IMG/VR virus record: IMGVR_UViG_3300047319_001872
Coordinates: 186,001-250,000 of that record
Reading direction: 5' to 3' (one strand)
DNA: 64,000 bases
The number at the start of each line of letters is the position of its first letter. The stretch's first letter is position 1. Below the pieces are notes generated by a model that saw nothing but the letters and a program-made list of their open reading frames with translations, ran no database searches and had not been told where the DNA came from. The position numbers and the translations under genes are program-made. Shown here in pieces: positions 6,966 through 25,490 of the stretch.

Positions 6966-7769
6966 TTACCCCAATAACGCGCGCGGCTTCATGTGGCCGA
7001 GCAGTTCTTCCATGCCGCCCTTGATCGAATGGATCGCAGGCATGTCGACCGCAATGAGCTCATTACGTGTGACAATCCCTTGATGCAGGTGACGGTGCTG
7101 CTCGGGGATCTTGTTCAGTTCCTCAGCCGTCAGCAAACGATGCACCGCCGTGCGGCGCGCGTACGTGCCGCGCTTAAAGAAGGCCGGGTAGTCGTTGTAG
7201 TTGATGCCCTTCTGGAAGAGCATCTCGTTCAAGTCCGACCAGCCCTTCTTGTGCAGCTGCTTGTGGCTATACTGCGACTGCGCCGCCATCTGGATGCTGT
7301 TGGTGGTCGCATCCGATTCGCGCCACAGGAACATGTTGAAGACTTCTGCCATGTTCGGCAATTGCCAGACCCGGCAGTCGAACTCCGGATCGATGTGGGC
7401 TTTCTCTGGCAGGTGCTGATTCATGTGGCGGATGAACTTGCCCGTGACCGACGAAGCAAATGCCCCGATCAATTTCTGCACGCGGCCGTCGTAAGGCATC
7501 AAAGCAAACGGATCGTCGTTCTTCAGGAAGATCGTGATTTCATCGCTTTGCGTATAGCCCAACGTAGCGTGCCAGCGCTCTACCAGGCCCTTGGTGGTCT
7601 CGATCATGCAGGTCGATAGCCGCTCGTCGTACGGGCGCTTCAAACCCCGTGTGAATGTACTGAAAGCGATCCCGTCCATGCGGATGACAATCGGCAGCAA
7701 CGGCATCAGACGACGATCGTCCGAGAGCTCGTAGCGCTTCATGCGATCGCCGAGTTTGTCCTTTCTCAT
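6966..7769 (-). CDS. thg1: tRNA(His) guanylyltransferase Thg1 / Thg1-like protein
   Basis: LGDRMKxYE, IRMDGIAFSTFT, YTQSDEIT and FDCRV motifs; RBS AAGGA before ATG 7769 (the track's 60-aa extension overlaps the upstream gene). Confidence 0.92.
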   Translation of the reverse strand: MRKDKLGDRMKRYELSDDRRLMPLLPIVIRMDGIAFSTFTRGLKRPYDERLSTCMIETTKGLVERWHATLGYTQSDEITIFLKNDDPFALMPYDGRVQKLIGAFASSVTGKFIRHMNQHLPEKAHIDPEFDCRVWQLPNMAEVFNMFLWRESDATTNSIQMAAQSQYSHKQLHKKGWSDLNEMLFQKGINYNDYPAFFKRGTYARRTAVHRLLTAEELNKIPEQHRHLHQGIVTRNELIAVDMPAIHSIKGGMEELLGHMKPRALLG

Positions 7770-7780
7770 TATTCTATCCT

Positions 7781-8044
7781 TCAACCCGGTCGGGTTTCTT
7801 CTTTGACCTCGTACTTGACCATCTTCATGTAGCGATCTTGACGAACGTCTAGCATCATGAACGCTGTTTTGTACGAGATGTCCGCGATGTCTGCTGACGT
7901 GAGATTCGTACCACGGGAGATATAGCCTTCCATAGCCCGCATCGCGCACGCATCTACGTAAGCGGCTTCCTCATCCGTGAGCGCGCGGTTCTGTGCCGGA
8001 TGCCAGAGCACTTTTGCGTAGGCCATGTCAGTCCTTATCGACAA
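7781..8044 (-). CDS. Hypothetical protein (87 aa)
   Basis: ORF tiling. Confidence 0.7.
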   Translation of the reverse strand: MSIRTDMAYAKVLWHPAQNRALTDEEAAYVDACAMRAMEGYISRGTNLTSADIADISYKTAFMMLDVRQDRYMKMVKYEVKEETRPG

Positions 8045-8300
8045 ACGTCTTCAGAAAGCTCGGTGAAAGCACCGCCACCGAACCACACCAGACAGGCTTA
8101 TCTCCGGCGTCTTCTGCAGAGACCGCGAGCGGATGCATATAGAGCTTTCCAAATCCATGCTCGTCCCGACTGAGCGTGAAATTGACATCAACGTTTGCTT
8201 GCATGACGGGCTTCAAGAACCCCAGCAAACCGATGACCTCTATCTCGCGCTCACGCAAGAACGCGAGTTCTTCTTCTAGGCTTTTCTCGGACATGCTCAC
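8028..8300 (-). CDS. Hypothetical protein (90 aa)
   Basis: Start coupled to the thyA stop. Confidence 0.7.
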
Positions 8301-9184
8301 ACCGCAAATGGATAGTTGATCGCCGGATGGTATTCCGGATACGTGACCTTGAAATCGTCGACCGTCACCCAGGTTTCCAGATCTTCCAGCGTCTTGATGT
8401 CTGGGTTGATGTCAATCGTCGGCTCAGCCAAAATCGACCGGCTCAACTGCACAGGCACCAAGTCCAGCTGGTTGCCGTAGATGTGCGAGTTCACATTACG
8501 GTGATACGCGTACTTCGGGTTCTTGCCCGTAATCTGCGCCATCAGTCGCAGGAACAACCAGACCTGCACCATGTTCGCCACGGTGCCGAGCGGCCAGTCT
8601 GAAGAGCGCTGGGTCGAATTCAGATACAGGTCGTCACCCAACAGCGAGAACTGATGTTCGTACATGCACGGCCGCAGGCAGCCCAAGTGGAACATACCCG
8701 GATTCCAGAACGTGATGATTTCGCCCCGATCATCGACGCCCTTCTTCAGGTTGTTGTAGACCTTGCGGAACAGATCGAGTGTGGTGTTCGACTCACCACC
8801 ATCCGGCGTGTAAAACTCAGTGACAGGCCAGTTCTTGGCGACTGCCCCGTAGATCAGGCCGAGGTCGTCTTCACCTTGACGGTTGGGGTTCTTCAGCCAT
8901 GCCGTATTTTCGTTGGCGTTGGCGTCCCACGACTTGGTGCCGAGCTCGCGCATCTGTGCGGCGGACGTGACACCCTTGATGTAACCGAGCAGCTCAGCGA
9001 TCGGGAGTTTCACCGGTGCTTTACGCGTGGTGACGATCGGTGCCTTGTTGCTGGTCGCGTCGTACGTGAGGTCGACATTGATCACCGTCCGACAGACGAT
9101 CCCGGTGCGTTCGTTCTTGAGATCGACGCCTTCGTCATGGATGCGGCGCAGGCCGTTCAGGTATTGTTGTTCAGCACGCAGCAT
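8297..9184 (-). CDS. thyA: Thymidylate synthase (ThyA type)
   Basis: [15 protein letters not shown] catalytic Cys, [13 protein letters not shown] motifs. Confidence 0.95.
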
Positions 9185-11502: not shown

Positions 11503-12306
11503 TCAGTTCTGTTGAAGGACAACGTCCGCAAAGAAACGATCGTACTGGACAATGTCCGGAGCTATACGGGTGAGACCTTGAGGGATCTCACGGCTTTCTA
11601 GCATCTTCTCAATCACACGGTCGATGCCAGCGATGCGTTGCACGCGCTCTTCGCCCTTAAGCTTCAGGTGCAACAGCTGCATGCAGCCTTCGAGCAGGTC
11701 GTGGTTGTACGCCGCCACATTGCACAATGCCAGGTAATTCACCGGCGGACATTCCGTGCCGAGGTCGAAGGTTGCGGTACGTTCGAACCAGATCGCATTC
11801 AATAGCGGCCGCACGGTGTGCAGGTACTTCTTCACTGAGACAGTGGGGCGTGGTTCGACGTAGGTCTTGTAATTGCGCCGCAAGATCGAGACGTTCTGCT
11901 GACGCAGCTTTAACGTCGAGAAACCTTTCCACATCAGTTCACGCAAGCGATTCGCATGATCCGTGGAATAATACTCGGGCAGTCGCAGCCAGTCGACGAT
12001 GGACGGATTCGAGTTGTACGCTAGGGTAGTGGCCTTCTCGATGTCAAAACCATTCAAGTCGCCAAAGCCGTCGACCTTGATTTCGAGCGTGTCACGGTTT
12101 TCCAGCAAGGCCGCGTCGCGATGCCCTTGGTTGATCTGGAAGTACGTGTGTTTAGGACGCACGTAGATGAAACCGATGTCATGGTCACTCTGTGGGTTGG
12201 CCAGTCCCCACGCCCGACTCCCTACTTCGACTGCGTGCAGGATGGTGACGTTATACGTCAGTCGGATGGATTCCAAATGGGCCAGCACGTTTTCATCTAC
12301 TGCCAT
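11503..12306 (-). CDS. Pol-beta-superfamily nucleotidyltransferase, RlaP/PF10127-like
   Basis: AVEVGSRAWGLANPQSDHDIGFIY (GSxAxG...SDxD), SNPSIVDWL, VKKYLHTVRPLL. Confidence 0.85.
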   Translation of the reverse strand: MAVDENVLAHLESIRLTYNVTILHAVEVGSRAWGLANPQSDHDIGFIYVRPKHTYFQINQGHRDAALLENRDTLEIKVDGFGDLNGFDIEKATTLAYNSNPSIVDWLRLPEYYSTDHANRLRELMWKGFSTLKLRQQNVSILRRNYKTYVEPRPTVSVKKYLHTVRPLLNAIWFERTATFDLGTECPPVNYLALCNVAAYNHDLLEGCMQLLHLKLKGEERVQRIAGIDRVIEKMLESREIPQGLTRIAPDIVQYDRFFADVVLQQN

Positions 12307-13991: not shown

Positions 13992-15416
13992 TTAAGCAGC
14001 TTTAATGAGAGTGTCGATCTGGCGAATCGTGTCTTCCAGATCGTTGACTTTCGGGATGGCATCGATGAATTGATCGAAGTTATCGTGATGCTCGAAGTAC
14101 AGCGCCTGGAGGTCACACCCCAGGATACTGCTAAAGCACGCAGCGGGTTCCGCGCTCCGGCCAGGGAACATCAGCTCGATGTAGTCCAGCACTTCGCTGT
14201 GCGTGAGTGGCTTGATCTCGAAGACGTGGTCCACGCGACCCTTACGAATCACCGCCGGATCAATGTCATCCAGCGTATTGGTCGTGAGGAAGATCAGCGT
14301 GCCATGCAGCGAGGCAATGCCGTCCAGCGCGTTCAGAATACCGGAGAGCGTGAGGCCATCCATGTCTTCGAGGAGCTTGGCCATCGGATTAACCGGCGCG
14401 TCATCCACCCCTAGACCCTTGATCGAATTGATCGCGCTTTCCAGGTTCGGCTTACCGCTGCTGTCGTATTTCACTGCGACCGTGTACTTCGTGCTGTCGT
14501 CACTCTTCATAGCTGAACGCCGCCGCGTAGCTTTTGCCGAGTCAAAGTCCTCGATCGCCAGAATGGAGCGGCTCGGAATATTCGCGAGTGCCTCTTCCAG
14601 CATCTCGTCATTGAGCGCATTCAGGTTTAGCCGACACACGTTCAGATTGAAGTGGCTGGCGAGTGCCTTGATGAGACTGGTCTTACCGGTGCCAGGCACG
14701 CCATGCAGCACAAAGGTCTTCTTCCACGGCAGGCCGCGCTCAGTGTACCAGGCCTCGCTCATCTGGAAGTCCTCGATGGCTTTGACGAGCGACTGCTTGA
14801 GTGCCTTCTCGACAATCACGGTTTTCAACTCACGGCGATCGAGCATCGCGTAATCGGCCCAGTAATTGCTCTTAAAGCGCATCAGCTTCAGCTTGTTCTC
14901 CGGGAACTTGTGGCAAAACACATCCACCAGGTCTTGCATGATCGCTTTGTTGCGACCAAACATGGTGAGCGTCACCACGTAGACGATATTATCGCGGCCT
15001 TGCTTTTCCATCGTCCGGCGGTGCATCAGAAACAGGCGTCGCTTGAAGAAAAAAAAGTGGTTACCGTCACCGATAGCCACGTCAGCCGCATTGCGACTGC
15101 CGTGACCATTGTGTCGATCAAAGAACTGCGCACCGTAGGTCTGCAAAGCCAGCTGGCGCGAATACTTCGCCCACTTGTTCTGCATGAACCACTCCATGAA
15201 GCTTGCATAATTCTCCCGTGCCCAGCCCAGCTCCGTATTGTCGAAGGTGAGCGTGGTGGTGAGCTGGCCGTGAATCTTGCTGATGAGCTTCATCGGGATC
15301 TTGCGAAAGACCCAGGTGACTAGGCCTAAACCCCACAGAGAGACTGCCCCCGCAATCATGGGATTCGAATGTGAGTAAGCGTTAAACGCCAACCAGAGAT
15401 TCGTGAGGTAATTCAT
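13992..15416 (-). CDS. BCS1-like membrane-anchored AAA+ ATPase
   Basis: N-terminal TM; BCS1_N-like region; Walker A GVPGTGKT, Walker B LAIEDFD, LSGILNALDG, TTN...DPAVIRKGRVD. Confidence 0.88.
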   Translation of the reverse strand: MNYLTNLWLAFNAYSHSNPMIAGAVSLWGLGLVTWVFRKIPMKLISKIHGQLTTTLTFDNTELGWARENYASFMEWFMQNKWAKYSRQLALQTYGAQFFDRHNGHGSRNAADVAIGDGNHFFFFKRRLFLMHRRTMEKQGRDNIVYVVTLTMFGRNKAIMQDLVDVFCHKFPENKLKLMRFKSNYWADYAMLDRRELKTVIVEKALKQSLVKAIEDFQMSEAWYTERGLPWKKTFVLHGVPGTGKTSLIKALASHFNLNVCRLNLNALNDEMLEEALANIPSRSILAIEDFDSAKATRRRSAMKSDDSTKYTVAVKYDSSGKPNLESAINSIKGLGVDDAPVNPMAKLLEDMDGLTLSGILNALDGIASLHGTLIFLTTNTLDDIDPAVIRKGRVDHVFEIKPLTHSEVLDYIELMFPGRSAEPAACFSSILGCDLQALYFEHHDNFDQFIDAIPKVNDLEDTIRQIDTLIKAA

Positions 15417-17259: not shown

Positions 17260-17706
17260 TCAGGTCGGCGAGATTACATCGAAGGTGACGATGTCCTTCA
17301 CCTTGACTTCACCGTCTGCTTTAATGTCGCACAGCGCACGAATCCCCAGCGTGACGGGTACGTCGTCTTCCAACAGTTGTTCAAGCGAGCCCTTCCAGCG
17401 CCCCGAGGGCTTCATGCAGGCGACCAACTTGTTCTCTTCGATCTTCACGTCAGTGATCTGACAGCAGGTATTCCCCATCTCCACCGTCTGGCAGCGCTCT
17501 TTGTACTGTTCGTGGGACTGACCTGCGTAGCGAGCAGGTTGGCCCAGTTCACCGTGCGCGCGGCCCTGCTCCACACGCGCATTAAACTTCTCCACAGCTT
17601 TGGCCATGGCTTGGGGGTTCCAGACTCGGCCCAGTTGGTCCGGCTCTCCCAACACCTTCACGACCACTTCAACCGAACCATCTTCCTTACGCACAAATTC
17701 CGTCAT
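17260..17706 (-). CDS. Prohead-protease-like protein (T4 gp21 / phiKZ gp175 family), catalytic residues apparently substituted
   Basis: GRVWNPQAMAKAVEKF...AHGELGQP...NTCCQITDVKIE...LGIRA; RBS AGGAG before ATG 17706. Confidence 0.7.
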   Translation of the reverse strand: MTEFVRKEDGSVEVVVKVLGEPDQLGRVWNPQAMAKAVEKFNARVEQGRAHGELGQPARYAGQSHEQYKERCQTVEMGNTCCQITDVKIEENKLVACMKPSGRWKGSLEQLLEDDVPVTLGIRALCDIKADGEVKVKDIVTFDVISPT

Positions 17707-17753
17707 GGCACACTCCTGTAATAGTCCAATCAATGGGTCAACGGCATAAAAAA

Positions 17754-17775
17754 GAGACCAGCCGAAGCTGGTCTC
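17754..17775 (-). terminator. UUCG hairpin terminator followed by TTTTTTATGCCG
   Basis: GAGACCAGC-CGAA-GCTGGTCTC perfect 9-bp stem. Confidence 0.85.
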
Positions 17776-17817: not shown

Positions 17818-18144
17818 TTAGATGTGCTGATCGAGCCAGGCCTTCAAGGCCTGCTTCGAAAGCGCACCGGCTTTCTGCGCGACGATGGCGCCGTCCTTGT
17901 AGATGAAGAGTGCCGGAATACCACGCACACCGAGCTTAGTCGGCGTCGCATCGTTTTCGTCGACGTTCACTTTCACGATCTGCAGCTTGTCGGCGTACTC
18001 GGGCGCGATGTCCGCCAGCGTCGGGACCAGCGTCTTGCACGGACCGCACCAGGGTGCCCAGAAGTCGACGAGAACCGGCTTGGACGATTGCACTACGTCT
18101 GCTTCGAACGTCGCGTCAGAAGCGTTTTTGATGATTTCGCTCAT
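17818..18144 (-). CDS. trxA: Thioredoxin
   Basis: VLVDFWAPWCGPCK active site, VRGIP, GALSK. Confidence 0.95.
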   Translation of the reverse strand: MSEIIKNASDATFEADVVQSSKPVLVDFWAPWCGPCKTLVPTLADIAPEYADKLQIVKVNVDENDATPTKLGVRGIPALFIYKDGAIVAQKAGALSKQALKAWLDQHI

Positions 18145-18212: not shown

Positions 18213-20093
18213 TTACAGCGTCGGCTCATCGGCACCGACAAGGCCACCCGAGATATTCAGGTTCCCATTGATCACCACCGGCGTATCCGACGCCACGACA
18301 ATCACCACCTTCGCATCGATCAGCGCCTGGACGCGCTCGTCGAGCTTCAGCAAGCGTGACGCCATGTCTTCGGTCACGTAGTAGCGCATCGAGTGATCGG
18401 CCAGATCATCGCCCGTGAGCGCCAGCACCATCTGCAGCACCTTGACCGTGAGGCGCGCTCGCGCGTCTTCGATGTTGGTGACGTTGCTGACCGCTTCGAG
18501 CGTCACATGCGGGGCCGACACCATCGGCAGTTCGTCGTCCGGCTGCGGCACATTCACACGCAAGCCTGCCGGAATCGACCCACTGCCCAGCAGATGCAAG
18601 TTCATGCGGCGCAGTTGGGCAACCGTGGTATGGAACTCGATCGCCAGTTCGGTGATCTTGTCGCCTTCCTTCGCTTCGATGTAGTACTGGTGCGTGACCG
18701 GATCGAAAATCGCCGGACGCACTTGCGAAGGTTCCACTGTCGAGTCGACACCTGCCAATGCCTCGAGTACGATACGCGACCAGTTCTCGAACTTCAGGCC
18801 AGCCGCGAGCAGTTCCTTGACTGTGCCGCGCGGTCCGTCGATCAGTTCTTCTTCGGCCACCTTCGCCTTGAGCGACTTGGGCACGACGATCAGGTTCACG
18901 AGACCCAGGTGCACCTTGCCGACGTTATCGCTGTCGTCACGGATGAAACCCAGATGTTCGAAGCGAAACAGCGACGGCGTCTTGAGCGGGGTTGCTTGGA
19001 GGCCATCGGCGTCGACGAAGACGAGTTCTTCGTTCGCCACTTCGCGCTGCAAGTTGGTGTTGATGGTCGTTTCGATGTCGAGCACCGACTGATCGTTGAC
19101 CTTGACGTCCAGGTGATCGACGTGACCGCCATAGCCCACCGAGAACTTGCCACCGAGACGCTCTTCGCCGACTTTCTTGGTGCGCTGATACGAAGAGATT
19201 TCATCCGTGTCCCAGTTGATCGGCAGCCCTTGACGGAAGGCTTCGTCGTCCTGGAAGACGACCGGCGAATACGGCAGCAACTGACGGTAGAACGGATTGG
19301 CTTCGAGGCCATCACGCTGACGGATGACCGTCTCAGCACCGACGATCGAGAGCCAGGTTTTGTACTCCTCCGCACTCAAGCGCGTGAGGCCGTGCGTGAG
19401 TCCCATGCCGGGCAGATTGTCCGTGAAGTCCTTGTCGATGGCAAGGATGTGACCGGGGTGTTTATATGTCTTCATCGTGGTTCCTTTGTTTTTGTGAATC
19501 GATCGATGGGAAAGCATCTGGGCGAGAAACTCACTCGTCCAGCGCTCTTGCGGAGAAAGCAAACGCTTAGCCTGTTCCGCCTGCTGACGCTCCTGCACCA
19601 CATGGGCAGGCTCGTAAGTGACGAAACTGTACTTAATACCGTGGATGCCCGAGGCGTGATCTTCGCGACGAGTCTCAGTCCACTGGGTCGGACGAATCGC
19701 CGGAAAGAAGGCATCGCCTTCAAATTCTCGATCAATCTCGGTGATGAGGAGTTTGTCGGCCTTGGGTAAGGCTTGTTCGTAGAGGGTCGCTCCGCCGATG
19801 AGAAACATCTCTTCCTCACCGCGATACTTACAATACTCGATCGCGGCTTCCAGTGAGCCTGCGGTCAAGCACCCTCTAAACTGCGCGGTCGCTTTGGTGG
19901 TCACGATAATGTTCTCGCGACCCGGCAAAGCGAAGCCGATGGACTCGTGCGTCTTGCGCCCCATGATGACGGGCTTGCCCGTCGTGATGCGCTTAAAGTA
20001 CGCCAGGTCCTCCGGCAAGTGCCAGGGAAGTTGGTTGTTCAAACCAATTACACTGTTACGGTCGCGCGCAGCGATGATGACAAGCTTAGTCAT
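18213..20093 (-). CDS. folA: Fusion: dihydrofolate reductase + NUDIX-like (COG4112/YmaB-type) phosphoesterase + LysM + C-terminal domain
   Basis: DHFR motifs IGLNNQLPWHLPEDLAYFK, VIMGRKT, LPGRENI, IGGATLY, GDAFFP; NUDIX-like YRQLLPY...GEERL...SVGYGGHVD...REVANEEL...VGKVHLG; LysM EGDKITELAIEFHTTVAQLRRMN...IPAGLRVNVP. Confidence 0.85.
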   Translation of the reverse strand: MTKLVIIAARDRNSVIGLNNQLPWHLPEDLAYFKRITTGKPVIMGRKTHESIGFALPGRENIIVTTKATAQFRGCLTAGSLEAAIEYCKYRGEEEMFLIGGATLYEQALPKADKLLITEIDREFEGDAFFPAIRPTQWTETRREDHASGIHGIKYSFVTYEPAHVVQERQQAEQAKRLLSPQERWTSEFLAQMLSHRSIHKNKGTTMKTYKHPGHILAIDKDFTDNLPGMGLTHGLTRLSAEEYKTWLSIVGAETVIRQRDGLEANPFYRQLLPYSPVVFQDDEAFRQGLPINWDTDEISSYQRTKKVGEERLGGKFSVGYGGHVDHLDVKVNDQSVLDIETTINTNLQREVANEELVFVDADGLQATPLKTPSLFRFEHLGFIRDDSDNVGKVHLGLVNLIVVPKSLKAKVAEEELIDGPRGTVKELLAAGLKFENWSRIVLEALAGVDSTVEPSQVRPAIFDPVTHQYYIEAKEGDKITELAIEFHTTVAQLRRMNLHLLGSGSIPAGLRVNVPQPDDELPMVSAPHVTLEAVSNVTNIEDARARLTVKVLQMVLALTGDDLADHSMRYYVTEDMASRLLKLDERVQALIDAKVVIVVASDTPVVINGNLNISGGLVGADEPTL

Positions 20094-20106: not shown

Positions 20107-20292
20107 TTATCCGATTTTGTTCATTGACTCTGTCATCACCCAGATCAGGATGCTGCCAAAGCTGACCAGCGTCGTCACGAGCGCACTGGTTTCTACCCGA
20201 CAGACTATCCGGGACTTCTCTTCTCGCATTGCGCACACAGCGAACACAATGAGGGAGAGAACGAAAATCGAAAAGAGAGGGAAAAAGATCAT
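20107..20292 (-). CDS. Small membrane protein (2 TM)
   Basis: Hydrophobic segments; fills the gap. Confidence 0.55.
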   Translation of the reverse strand: MIFFPLFSIFVLSLIVFAVCAMREEKSRIVCRVETSALVTTLVSFGSILIWVMTESMNKIG

Positions 20293-20759
20293 AGGCGTTT
20301 CAGCACGAAGAGCAGCACACTACTTAAGAGCGCCAGCTGTCCGCACCAGATCAAAACTCCAGCGTAATGAAAATGTCTTGCCCGGATGCGCCGCGCATGG
20401 GCGTGATCGGTCCGACGATATTGACGAAACTGGCCTTCTGCCCGAAAGCAGGCGAGCAGCGCCAACAGAAAGAAAAGTGCACTACTAAAGGACACCAGCG
20501 CACAAGGCTCAAGCGGAGTGTCAGCATAAGCTGCCTCTACTCCGTAAAAAAGTTGTTGCGCAAGACTCACCAGGAACTGCACAAACCACCAGACTACGGT
20601 CGCGCCAGTAATACAACAGCCCAACACAAACAGCACCGAGCCCACACGATCACTGGCGGCATAGGGCTTGCCCTGCTTGTGCTCTTCTTGCGTGATCCCA
20701 AAACAACTCAGAAGGGTAAGACCCACTGCGAACATGCCCAGCCCCACGTAAAACCACAT
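20289..20759 (-). CDS. Membrane protein (4 TM)
   Basis: Four hydrophobic segments; RBS AGGA. Confidence 0.7.
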   Translation of the reverse strand: MWFYVGLGMFAVGLTLLSCFGITQEEHKQGKPYAASDRVGSVLFVLGCCITGATVVWWFVQFLVSLAQQLFYGVEAAYADTPLEPCALVSFSSALFFLLALLACFRAEGQFRQYRRTDHAHARRIRARHFHYAGVLIWCGQLALLSSVLLFVLKRL

Positions 20760-20785
20760 GAGCTCATCCTAAAAGGAAATAAAAA

Positions 20786-20801
20786 GAGGGCCGAAGCCCT
20801 C
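20786..20801 (-). terminator. UUCG hairpin terminator with T5 tail
   Basis: GAGGGC-CGAA-GCCCTC; A5 adjacent on the plus strand. Confidence 0.75.
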
Positions 20802-20815
20802 TCTTCAGTTAGGGA

Positions 20816-24755: not shown

Positions 24756-25490
24756 TTAAGCGACGCTCGTGCTCTTGTCGATCCACTCCTGCACGAAGCG
24801 GGAAAGATCCGGCCGATCCGGGTAGCCGAACTTCGGCATGTTCTCACCCGTGTGACAGGGCAGCACGTCCCATTCGAGCCACGAGTTGATCTGCATGTCG
24901 ATGTAGATCGGCGCCATGTTCGCATCGACACGATACACGTTCTTGAAGAGCTTCTCGTCGTAGGCCTTCTTGAAGCCCTCGTTGACGCGCTTCTTGAACG
25001 CGATGCCTTCTTGGTCGATGCGGTCGCTCTTGCCGTTGTCTTCAGCGCGCTGATTCAGACGCCGGATGCCTTCTTCGACCTCGACATCGAAATACGCCAC
25101 GAAGTCGGGCCAGGCACCATTACGCGCGAAGGTGTCCAGCATCGTCACATCCGGTCCCAGCCCGCGCGCCACTTGCTGATAGGCGTAGCTTGACATCGAG
25201 AAGCGATCACACAGCACGATGTACCCTGCTTCCAGTGCCGGTTTGATCATCTGCTCGACGTGTTGTGCGCGCGCCGCTGCAAAGAGCAGCATCTCACAAC
25301 GCGGCACACAGTACTGGTGCAGAATGATTTCACGGATCTCTTCACTGACCGGTGTGCCGCCCGGTTCACGGGTCTTCAAGACTTTGTAGCCCTGTTTCGT
25401 GAGACGCTCGTAGGTGGCATTCAACGACGTCGTCTTGCCTGCGCCGTCCGGTCCTTCAAAAGCGATCCAAATACCCCGAGTATTGCTCAT
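24756..25490 (-). CDS. tmk: Thymidylate kinase
   Basis: IAFEGPDGAGKTT, TREPGGT, LLFAAARAQH, VLCDRF. Confidence 0.95.
   Translation of the reverse strand: MSNTRGIWIAFEGPDGAGKTTSLNATYERLTKQGYKVLKTREPGGTPVSEEIREIILHQYCVPRCEMLLFAAARAQHVEQMIKPALEAGYIVLCDRFSMSSYAYQQVARGLGPDVTMLDTFARNGAWPDFVAYFDVEVEEGIRRLNQRAEDNGKSDRIDQEGIAFKKRVNEGFKKAYDEKLFKNVYRVDANMAPIYIDMQINSWLEWDVLPCHTGENMPKFGYPDRPDLSRFVQEWIDKSTSVA

What the first reader, a model, noticed from the sequence alone, without database searches (positions are those of the whole stretch)
18213..20093. DHFR-NUDIX-LysM fusion with an internal start site
Seen: one 626-aa frame joins a complete DHFR (~165 aa), a linker, a COG4112-type NUDIX-like domain, a LysM repeat and a small C-terminal domain. 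An internal AAGGAA-N5-ATG (ATG at 19475, MKTYKHP) sits just before the NUDIX domain, so two in-frame products are plausible. Joining folate and nucleotide-pool enzymes to a peptidoglycan-binding module is an architecture I do not recognise. It may be a dTTP-pathway metabolon or a recent loss of the DHFR stop codon.
Basis: partly seen in the sequence, partly recalled or inferred. Interest (0 to 1): 0.6.

Follow-up and report, generated by a model that had tools for sequence, protein, structure and literature searches.

The report
Phage DHFR fused to Nudix-LysM protein
A soil jumbo phage has joined its dihydrofolate reductase gene to the next gene, a YmaB-type Nudix hydrolase carrying a LysM module; the join is real, is shared with related phages, keeps the second gene's own start signal, and ties a poorly understood Nudix family to thymidylate synthesis.

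Summary
Window 18213-20093 (-) is one 626-codon frame made of:
- a complete DHFR (residues 1-165);
- a 41-residue linker;
- a Nudix-fold domain of the TM1382/YmaB (COG4112, phrog_8902) family (207-455);
- a LysM (469-516);
- a C-terminal part with no fold match, ending in EPTL.

It is not an assembly error. Three other IMG/VR genomes and contigs from independent rhizosphere runs carry the same open frame.

It is not a recent accident. Eight further protein clusters at 44-66% identity are also fused. Burkholderia phage FLC9 and one metagenomic relative have the two genes separate, and one relative has no DHFR at that position. On the tree, fused and split states changed at least twice.

The internal ATG (19475) is the orthologue of the start codon of the separate gene. 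Its Shine-Dalgarno box is kept in most fused genes, so a 69.7-kDa and a 46.3-kDa product are both likely.

The genome encodes dCTP deaminase, ThyA, dTMP kinase and thioredoxin. I found no dUTPase match above its cut-off and no dCMP deaminase. My best reading is a thymidylate-pathway protein whose Nudix part is a dNTP pyrophosphohydrolase, possibly making dUMP. The LysM role is unexplained.

Verdict: a new domain architecture of known families, of moderate interest.

The parts
18213..20093 (-). Whole fused ORF, 626 codons plus stop (P0001), 69.7 kDa
   Evidence: the same frame is open in L010-L012 and in contigs of independent runs
19599..20093 (-). DHFR domain, residues 1-165
   Evidence: Pfam DHFR_1 at E 1e-56; PDB 9svm at E 6e-53 and E. 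coli DHFR at E 3e-34; 61% identical to FLC9 gp287
19476..19598 (-). Linker, residues 166-206. Its first part is the charged C-terminal extension that stand-alone DHFRs of this clade also carry; its last seven codons are the translated ribosome-binding region of the former second gene.
   Evidence: pN/pS 0.39 among four fused genes at about 65% identity
19482..19487 (-). Shine-Dalgarno-like AAAGGA, 6 nt before the internal ATG
   Evidence: duplex energy -5.6 kcal/mol, against a median of -5.2 for 311 gene starts and -2.5 for 1658 internal ATGs of this genome; conserved in relatives
19473..19475 (-). Internal ATG (M207), orthologous to the start codon of the separate Nudix-LysM gene in FLC9, L009 and L008; would give a 420-aa, 46.3-kDa product
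18729..19475 (-). Nudix-fold domain of the TM1382/YmaB (COG4112, phrog_8902) family, residues 207-455
19026..19046 (-). Variant Nudix helix motif R350-E351-V-x-x-E355-E356; it is one residue longer than the canonical REUxEE that more distant family members have
   Evidence: alignments
18546..18689 (-). LysM domain, residues 469-516
   Evidence: Pfam 15.7 bits here and 33-52 bits in relatives; AF2 model with beta-alpha-alpha-beta topology; Foldseek rmsd 1.3-1.8 A to LysM domains; VIA Z 7.3
18294..18512 (-). C-terminal helix/strand domain, residues about 528-600, with no recognised fold
   Evidence: the fastest-evolving part (pN/pS 0.70)
18216..18227 (-). C-terminal EPTL tail, conserved in 7 of 12 clade members whether fused or split
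   Evidence: no other ORF of 60 codons or more in the genome ends this way
17818..18144 (-). Thioredoxin gene immediately downstream, followed by a terminator-like hairpin at 17754-17775
   Evidence: the same order is seen in relatives
20107..20759 (-). Two small predicted membrane-protein genes (61 aa and 156 aa) upstream, after a terminator-like hairpin at 20780-20807; probably the same transcription unit
   Evidence: syntenic in relatives
8297..9184 (-). ThyA-type thymidylate synthase, the enzyme whose dihydrofolate by-product DHFR recycles
24756..25490 (-). Thymidylate kinase

Best explanation
Two neighbouring phage genes have become one reading frame through loss of the first gene's stop codon. 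The first is a DHFR with a short charged C-terminal extension. The second is a YmaB/TM1382-type Nudix hydrolase that already carried a LysM domain. The fused gene is real, is under purifying selection across its length including the linker, and is the commoner state in this clade of soil jumbo phages. Because the former ribosome-binding site and ATG are retained inside the frame, the gene probably gives two proteins: the full 69.7-kDa DHFR-Nudix-LysM protein and a 46.3-kDa Nudix-LysM protein. Functionally (inferred) it belongs to the phage's thymidylate route. DHFR regenerates tetrahydrofolate for the phage ThyA. The Nudix domain is a (d)NTP pyrophosphohydrolase; the most economical guess is that it turns the dUTP made by the phage dCTP deaminase into dUMP for ThyA. 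The phage dTMP kinase then takes dTMP onward. The repeated switching between fused and split forms suggests that the two halves work in the same process, and that covalent linkage is helpful but not required. The roles of the LysM, the C-terminal domain and the EPTL tail are not explained; they most likely mediate localisation or partner binding.
For: Shown:
- Domain identities.
- Split orthologues: the second gene starts at the position of M207.
- Fused orthologues: eight clusters at 44-66% identity, three near-identical genomes and independent contigs with no change between 19204 and 20017.
- Linker: pN/pS 0.39, against 0.30-0.44 in the domains.
- SD energies: fused genes median -5.3 kcal/mol; unfused genes -5.1, -2.9 and -4.0; this genome's internal ATGs median -2.5.
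- Tree: at least two state changes inside one sub-clade, 4 on the whole tree. The stops have different positions and frames (TAA in frame at -21 in L009; TAG out of frame at -20 in FLC9, plus a 31-nt indel against its fused sister).
- Catalytic motif: the RE..EE glutamates are invariant across the family.

Context:
- This genome has ThyA, dTMP kinase, thioredoxin and dCTP deaminase (TIGR02274, 154.8 bits against a cut-off of 92.8).
- No dUTPase match reaches the family cut-off, and there is no dCMP deaminase.
- The same Nudix family lies between DHFR and dTMP kinase, after TS, in Nickievirus; after dTMP kinase in L013; near dCTP deaminase in PaBG and an Acinetobacter phage; and before thioredoxin in Geobacillus phage GR1.
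- phrog_8902 also matches in B. subtilis and T. maritima.
- YmaB sits in the nrd operon, and recombinant YmaB showed dNTP pyrophosphohydrolase activity in preliminary work (PMC5960316).
Against: - No expression, protein or enzymatic data exist for any member of this clade, and no RNA run holds the sequence.
- About 11% of internal ATGs in this genome have an equally good SD. Two fused relatives have weak ones (-2.9 and -0.9).
- Pfam NUDIX does not match, and the canonical Nudix box is only partly present.
- The dUTP substrate is a pathway-gap inference only. The host dUTPase could fill the gap, the phage dCTP deaminase might be bifunctional, and Geobacillus phage GR1 has both a dUTPase and this Nudix.
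- Nothing in a thymidylate role explains a LysM domain on a protein with no signal peptide or transmembrane segment.
- The complex prediction for the DHFR and Nudix domains gave no verdict.
Confidence: 0.6

Rival explanations
1. The Nudix domain is a regulatory or house-cleaning dNTPase rather than a supplier of dUMP. For example, it could make dAMP from dATP, as was speculated for YmaB, or remove oxidised or non-canonical dNTPs. Under this reading the fusion to DHFR only reflects co-expression of nucleotide-pool enzymes.
For: The only biochemical hint for the family is a general dNTP pyrophosphohydrolase activity of YmaB and its proposed link to dATP/dAMP (PMC5960316). Geobacillus phage GR1 has a dUTPase as well as this Nudix. 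Family members also sit beside primase, helicase and RecA genes.
Against: The family repeatedly neighbours thymidylate enzymes in particular (DHFR, TS, dTMP kinase, dCTP deaminase), in at least four lineages. The phage has no RNR for it to regulate.
Confidence: 0.22
2. The Nudix-LysM module acts on sugar nucleotides of cell-wall synthesis (UDP-GlcNAc, UDP-MurNAc-peptide). LysM would recognise the GlcNAc/MurNAc part. UMP would be released for pyrimidine supply while host wall synthesis is starved.
For: Nudix enzymes cleave nucleoside diphosphate-X compounds (general knowledge). LysM is a GlcNAc-glycan binder, and the closest structural matches are peptidoglycan- and chitin-binding LysMs. Nudix+LysM is older than the DHFR fusion, since it is also present in the distant L013 protein with two LysMs. 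This reading would explain a LysM on a cytoplasmic enzyme.
Against: Most family members, including Nickievirus, PaBG, the Bacillus and Staphylococcus phages, YmaB and TM1382, have no LysM, yet sit in dNTP or replication contexts. LysM domains bind oligosaccharides rather than single sugar nucleotides (general knowledge). LysM folds also serve as protein-protein modules in phage baseplates.
Confidence: 0.08
3. The Nudix domain is a folate-branch enzyme, a dihydroneopterin-triphosphate pyrophosphatase like NudB/FolQ, so that both halves of the protein serve folate supply.
For: It is fused or adjacent to DHFR in two phage lineages. A Nudix enzyme catalyses that step in bacteria (general knowledge).
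Against: The phage has no GTP cyclohydrolase I and no pterin-binding (FolP) enzyme. The family's other contexts are nrd, dCTP deaminase, dTMP kinase and replication genes. There is no sequence match to a NudB-type NCBIfam model.
Confidence: 0.05
4. The protein is envelope- or virion-associated. LysM would anchor it to peptidoglycan, or serve as a baseplate-type structural module.
For: Baseplate LysM proteins (pyocin R2, P2 gpX, contractile injection systems) are among the fold matches. Two membrane-protein genes lie in the same apparent transcription unit. A periplasmic-binding-protein gene is inserted next to it in some relatives.
Against: There is no signal peptide or transmembrane segment. 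The immediate neighbours are thioredoxin and nucleotide enzymes. No proteomic data exist.
Confidence: 0.04
5. The single frame is an assembly or sequencing artefact, or a decaying pseudogene.
For: Only that the nearest cultured phage, FLC9, has two genes.
Against: The identical frame is present in three other IMG/VR genomes at 94-99% identity and in contigs of independent runs with no difference at the junction. There are eight diverged fused clusters. Substitutions are mostly synonymous (114 synonymous against 22 non-synonymous changed codons versus L011), and pN/pS is 0.3-0.4.
Confidence: 0.01

Closest known systems
Burkholderia phage FLC9 gp287 (DHFR, 190 aa) plus gp286 (633 aa hypothetical protein)
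   Same: Orthologous pair in the same gene order and neighbourhood. The DHFR is 61% identical and the Nudix-LysM part 44% identical. The second gene starts at the equivalent of M207 and has the same EPTL end.
   Different: Two separate genes, with a TAG stop 20 nt before the ATG in another frame. gp286 has an extra roughly 100-residue domain and a second LysM that the window's protein lacks. Both are annotated only as hypothetical proteins.
B. subtilis YmaB and T. maritima TM1382 (PDB 3e57), COG4112-type Nudix proteins
   Same: Same family (phrog_8902 matches both control genomes; 3e57 by sequence and fold). Shared motifs are YxR..GExRL, SxGxGGH, RE..EE and ExW. YmaB is linked to deoxynucleotide metabolism (PMC5960316).
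   Different: They are single-domain bacterial proteins of about 200 aa, with no DHFR, LysM or C-terminal domain. Their RE-x-x-EE helix is canonical, whereas the jumbo-phage clade has a one-residue insertion. Their physiological substrate is also unknown.
Nickievirus (Pseudomonas phages nickie, phiK7B1) 218-aa protein between DHFR and dTMP kinase
   Same: Same Nudix family (38% identity; TM 0.87 by target) directly after a DHFR gene in a TS-DHFR-Nudix-dTMP kinase row.
   Different: It is a separate gene with no LysM. Its DHFR is a divergent 280-aa protein.
Bifunctional DHFR-TS of protozoa and plants (general knowledge)
   Same: A precedent for joining DHFR to another enzyme of the thymidylate cycle in one polypeptide.
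   Different: The partner there is thymidylate synthase. Here ThyA is a separate gene 9 kb away, and the partner is a Nudix hydrolase.
Phage T4 gp56 dCTPase/dUTPase and the T4 dNTP-synthesising enzyme complex (general knowledge)
   Same: A functional analogy for the proposed step: a phage pyrophosphatase that turns dCTP/dUTP into the monophosphate feeding the TS-family enzyme, working alongside DHFR.
   Different: T4 gp56 was not compared with this protein here, and I take it not to be a Nudix protein (general knowledge). No homology was tested or is claimed, and no complex has been shown here.

Membership tests
Dihydrofolate reductase (Pfam PF00186) | Full-length match to the family model above the curated cut-off | tested here: met
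   191.5 bits against a cut-off of 25, covering profile positions 2-158 of 159; phrog_316 at E 9e-47
Dihydrofolate reductase (Pfam PF00186) | Conserved substrate and NADPH motifs aligned with solved enzymes (PW.LP.DL..FK, MGRKT.ESIG, IGG) | tested here: met
   Gap-free alignment to 9svm over residues 1-161 with these motifs identical; enzymatic activity was not tested
Nudix superfamily | Nudix alpha/beta/alpha fold | tested here: met
   AF2 model with pLDDT mostly 80-94 in this domain; Foldseek matches to 3e57 (E 1e-10) and then to many Nudix hydrolases, including MTH1 and ADP-ribose pyrophosphatases
Nudix superfamily | Canonical Nudix box GX5EX7REUXEEXGU, or a Pfam NUDIX (PF00293) match | tested here: not met
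   No PF00293 match at E up to 1. The motif here is S-x13-RE-V-x-x-EE: the first G is S, the middle E is absent, and there is one extra residue before EE. The RE and EE glutamates are invariant.
TM1382/YmaB family (COG4112; phrog_8902) | Match to the family profile over most of its length | tested here: met
   phrog_8902 at E 2e-40, positions 30-234 of 238; the profile also matches B. subtilis and T. maritima; phmmer to 3e57 at E 2e-5
TM1382/YmaB family (COG4112; phrog_8902) | Family-specific invariant motifs (YxR, GExRL, SxGxGGH, RE..EE, VxxxHxG, ExW) | tested here: met
   All are invariant in a 10-sequence alignment spanning jumbo phages, Nickievirus, PaBG, and Geobacillus, Bacillus and Acinetobacter phages
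TM1382/YmaB family (COG4112; phrog_8902) | dNTP pyrophosphohydrolase activity | not testable with these tools
   Only a preliminary report for YmaB, cited in PMC5960316
LysM (Pfam PF01476) | Sequence match above the curated cut-off | tested here: inconclusive
   15.7 bits against 20.9 in this protein; the aligned segment of relatives scores 33.2-51.9 bits; phmmer to the Ecp6 LysM at E 0.0099
LysM (Pfam PF01476) | Beta-alpha-alpha-beta fold superposable on solved LysM domains | tested here: met
   Foldseek top 10 are all LysM domains, rmsd 1.3-1.8 A over 46-50 columns (4.6 A over 58 for one); VIA Z 7.3, rmsd 1.3 A, 49 of 49 residues of 5k2l
LysM (Pfam PF01476) | Binding of peptidoglycan or chitin oligosaccharides | not testable with these tools
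Bifunctional DHFR-TS | Thymidylate synthase domain in the same polypeptide | tested here: not met
   There is no TS match in the ORF; ThyA is a separate gene at window 8297-9184

The most novel reading that the evidence does not exclude
The LysM is not decoration. The Nudix-LysM module would recognise GlcNAc/MurNAc-bearing molecules (UDP-GlcNAc, UDP-MurNAc-peptide or wall fragments). The fusion to DHFR would then couple raiding of the host's large UDP-sugar pool, or anchoring at the wall-synthesis machinery, to phage thymidylate production. That would be a previously undescribed link between cell-wall precursors and phage DNA precursor supply.
Probability: 0.08. Interest if true: 0.75.

Novelty: new variant of a known kind. 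Interest (0 to 1): 0.42.

Why it matters
The YmaB/TM1382 (COG4112) Nudix family has had a solved structure since 2008 and sits in the B. subtilis ribonucleotide reductase operon, yet it still has no established substrate. A conserved fusion to DHFR that has switched between fused and split forms more than once is a 'Rosetta-stone' link pointing to the thymidylate cycle. The phage pathway also lacks exactly one step, dUTP to dUMP. Together these give a concrete, cheap hypothesis to test. The locus is also a clean natural example of how a gene fusion can arise by stop-codon loss while the downstream gene's start signal stays in use. The cultured phage FLC9 carries the split form and could serve as a comparator. 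The LysM domain on an apparently cytoplasmic nucleotide enzyme remains a real oddity.

Tried and rejected
- Assembly error: rejected.
- Near-identical phage DNA in INPHARED: none found.
- NCBIfam models for the non-DHFR part: no match.
- Pfam NUDIX: no match.
- Complex prediction of the DHFR domain against the Nudix domain: no verdict, score 0.00, so it counts neither for nor against binding.
- C-terminal domain: Foldseek PDB, VIA wide search and ESM Atlas gave only weak, heterogeneous matches (Z below 5, TM below 0.5), so no fold is assigned.
- EPTL tail as a genome-wide motif: no other ORF ends this way.
- RNA structure around the internal start: not unusual, z -1.07.
- Internal promoter: the only sigma-70-like match on the minus strand lies downstream of the ATG (19444-19416), so it is not useful.
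- RNA-seq evidence: no RNA run holds the stretch.
- Folate-synthesis genes, RNR, ThyX and dCMP deaminase in the genome: none found.
- Literature: no paper on COG4112, or on Nudix together with LysM in jumbo phages. The jumbo-phage comparative review mentions Nudix only in NAD/ADP-ribose contexts.
- The exhaustive representative protein search was not run, because no claim here rests on absence of relatives.
- No alternative genetic code was used.
Full report
**What is there**

The window is bases 186001-250000 of a complete 313,315-bp IMG/VR phage record with direct terminal repeats, so it is a jumbo phage. It is found in rhizosphere and soil metagenomes.

On the minus strand, 18213-20093 is a single 626-codon frame. 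Its parts are:
- **DHFR.** Pfam places a complete dihydrofolate reductase at residues 4-161 (E 1e-56). It aligns without gaps to solved bacterial DHFRs, with the usual substrate and NADPH motifs intact (9svm, E 6e-53).
- **Nudix-like domain.** Residues 238-447 match phrog_8902, a phage family of unknown function (E 2e-40).
- **LysM.** A weak LysM match lies at 475-516 (15.7 bits, below the 20.9 cut-off).
- **Internal start.** This is codon 207. The two possible products are 69.7 and 46.3 kDa.

**The middle and C-terminal domains**

The middle domain matches PDB 3e57 (T. maritima TM1382, 'putative Nudix hydrolase'). It does so by sequence (E 2e-5) and by fold: an AlphaFold2 model of residues 206-626 (mean pLDDT 77) gives Foldseek E 1e-10 and TM 0.80 by target, followed by many ordinary Nudix enzymes.

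The phrog profile also matches in B. subtilis and T. maritima among 14 control genomes. The Bacillus phage SP-15 homologue is annotated as similar to BSU17400, the gene next to nrdE/nrdF.

The canonical Nudix signature is only partly present, and Pfam NUDIX does not match. However, the RE..EE glutamates of the catalytic helix are invariant across the family, and so are several family-specific motifs (YxR, GExRL, SxGxGGH, ExW). This clade has one extra residue in the helix motif.

The LysM call is firm despite the weak score here:
- The same segment scores 33-52 bits in relatives.
- The model has the beta-alpha-alpha-beta topology at pLDDT 85-90.
- It superposes on solved LysM domains at 1.3-1.8 A and at Z 7.3.

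Residues about 528-600 are predicted folded but match nothing convincingly. The protein ends in EPTL. This tail is kept in 7 of 12 clade members and is found on no other ORF of this genome.

**Fused or split**

The nearest cultured phage, Burkholderia phage FLC9, has two genes:
- gp287 is a 190-aa DHFR, 61% identical.
- After a 17-nt spacer comes gp286, 633 aa and 44% identical. Its first residues align with M207 onward.

The word-index protein search found eight more clusters that cover 96-100% of the query and carry DHFR. They are 44-66% identical, 617-881 aa long, and several lie on contigs of 160-327 kb. It also found three unfused relatives.

DNA for all of them was retrieved. L009 has a separate 179-aa DHFR ended by an in-frame TAA six codons before the ATG. 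FLC9 has an out-of-frame TAG 20 nt before it. L008 has no DHFR there at all.

The neighbourhood is the same everywhere: DUF8224 protein, a 4-TM membrane protein, usually a 60-aa membrane protein, then DHFR(-)Nudix-LysM, thioredoxin and S80-like peptidase.

**Not an artefact, not recent**

- Three other IMG/VR genomes at 94-99% identity have the same 635-codon open frame.
- Contigs from four independent rhizosphere runs show no substitution or indel between 19204 and 20017. Two of those contigs span the whole gene.
- Differences from L011 and L012 are mostly synonymous: 114 against 22, and 128 against 33 changed codons.
- Among the four fused genes at about 65% identity, the linker has pN/pS 0.39. 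The other parts give 0.30 (DHFR), 0.35 (Nudix), 0.44 (LysM) and 0.70 (C-terminal part). The linker is therefore translated and constrained.

On a maximum-likelihood tree of the shared part, the fused P0013 is sister to the split FLC9 (support 91/98), inside a group that also holds a fused and a split member. At least two state changes are needed there, and four on the whole tree. The stops differ in place and frame, and FLC9 differs from P0013 by a 31-nt indel. These were therefore independent events. In L009 against L033, the difference at the stop is a single base (TAA against GAA).

**The internal start**

The stretch before the ATG is recognisably the same sequence in split and fused genes (..aaacaagga..). 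In the split genes it is the intergenic ribosome-binding site.

Anti-SD duplex energies are as follows:

| Group | Energies (kcal/mol) |
|---|---|
| Nine fused genes | -5.6, -5.6, -5.3, -3.2, -7.7, -8.0, -5.1, -2.9, -0.9 |
| Three unfused genes | -5.1, -2.9, -4.0 |
| 311 gene starts of this genome | median -5.2 |
| 1658 internal ATGs of this genome | median -2.5 |

Only 11% of internal ATGs in this genome are as good as the window's site. The Met falls in the unstructured first residues of the model (pLDDT below 50), so its conservation is not structural.

I conclude that internal initiation is likely but unproven. No stand-alone DHFR can be made from this gene.

**Function**

Everything from here on is inference.

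The phage encodes:
- a ThyA-type thymidylate synthase (window 8297-9184);
- a dTMP kinase (24756-25490);
- thioredoxin directly downstream;
- outside the window, a dCTP deaminase (TIGR02274, 154.8 bits against a cut-off of 92.8).

The searches found no ribonucleotide reductase, ThyX, dCMP deaminase, GTP cyclohydrolase I or FolP, and no dUTPase match reached its cut-off.

The route dCTP to dUTP to dUMP to dTMP to dTDP, with dihydrofolate recycling, is therefore phage-encoded except for the pyrophosphatase step dUTP to dUMP.

The same Nudix family occurs in these contexts:
- between DHFR and dTMP kinase, after TS, in Nickievirus;
- just after dTMP kinase in the distant 254-kb phage of L013, where it already carries two LysMs;
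- near dCTP deaminase in PaBG and in an Acinetobacter phage;
- before thioredoxin in Geobacillus phage GR1;
- in the nrd operon of B. subtilis, where recombinant YmaB showed dNTP pyrophosphohydrolase activity in preliminary work (PMC5960316).

FLC9, L013 and Nickievirus likewise lack a dUTPase match above cut-off and a dCMP deaminase.

The most economical model is a dNTP pyrophosphohydrolase that feeds or polices the thymidylate branch, joined to the enzyme that recycles ThyA's cofactor. The dUTP assignment itself is a guess of perhaps one in three:
- GR1 has its own dUTPase as well.
- The host enzyme could serve.
- The dCTP deaminase could be bifunctional.

**What stays unexplained**

- **The LysM.** The protein has no signal peptide or membrane segment. 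Its fold matches include both glycan-binding LysMs and baseplate LysMs, which act as protein-protein modules.
- **The C-terminal domain and the EPTL tail.**
- **A physical DHFR-Nudix contact.** The complex prediction gave no verdict, so this is not claimed.

**Comparison and novelty**

Fusions of DHFR with thymidylate synthase are textbook knowledge. I found no paper describing a DHFR-Nudix, Nudix-LysM or DHFR-Nudix-LysM architecture. Public annotation calls these proteins 'dihydrofolate reductase' or 'hypothetical'.

This is a new domain architecture built from known families, present in at least nine 90%-identity clusters of uncultured soil jumbo phages. It is not a new kind of system.

Its value is as a functional pointer for the YmaB/TM1382 family, and as a tidy case of fusion by stop loss with a retained internal start.

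**Limits**

- All support is comparative. There are no expression or activity data.
- The read check used contigs, not raw reads.
- pS is near saturation (0.5-0.7), so the pN/pS values are rough.
- The tree has several weakly supported forks.

Noticed in passing
window 18216-18227 (-), last four codons: The protein ends in EPTL. The same tail (EPTL, mostly EEPTL or DEPTL) closes 7 of 12 clade members despite very different C-terminal lengths, and no other ORF of 60 codons or more in the genome ends this way. It may be a docking or recognition peptide.
   Followed up: partly
window 20107-20292 (-) and 20289-20759 (-): Two small predicted membrane proteins (about 2 and 4 hydrophobic segments) lie between a terminator-like hairpin (20780-20807) and the fusion gene. 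They are syntenic in all relatives, and no family matches them.
   Followed up: partly
P0003, P0010-P0015 (relatives); L001:5016-6917: Longer relatives carry an extra conserved block of about 100 residues (PNP...WDVN...GYCGANGSH), and most of them also carry a second LysM before the EPTL end. The window's protein lacks both. The block has no Pfam match.
   Followed up: partly
L006:7109-8242, L008:7091-8227, L022:4925-6058: In some relatives a 377-aa periplasmic-binding-protein gene (Peripla_BP_6 / ANF_receptor) is inserted between the fusion gene and thioredoxin. It is absent from the window.
   Followed up: no
G000:C1 about 149626-150495 (-), outside the window (L030:1426-2295): The phage dCTP deaminase is 289 aa, with an unmatched N-terminal extension of about 125 residues. 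Similar weak dUTPase-family matches in long ORFs occur in FLC9 and in the L013 phage.
   Followed up: partly
window 17260-17733 (-), 13992-15416 (-), 11503-12306 (-), 6966-7949 (-): Other genes on the same strand: a short S80-type (phiKZ-like prohead protease family) protein, a BCS1-like AAA ATPase with the BCS1_N domain, an RlaP RNA-repair nucleotidyltransferase, and a Thg1-like tRNA-His guanylyltransferase.
   Followed up: no
P0018 (380 aa, 2.6-kb contig) and P0020 (555 aa): Other unusual fusions turned up in the search: DHFR joined to IspD/NTP_transf_3 nucleotidyltransferase domains, and a YmaB-like Nudix joined to an FKBP-type prolyl isomerase.
   Followed up: no
L002:3172-4014 (Pseudomonas phage phiK7B1): The Nickievirus 'DHFR' is 280 aa, with a roughly 120-residue C-terminal extension of unknown nature directly before the Nudix gene.
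   Followed up: no
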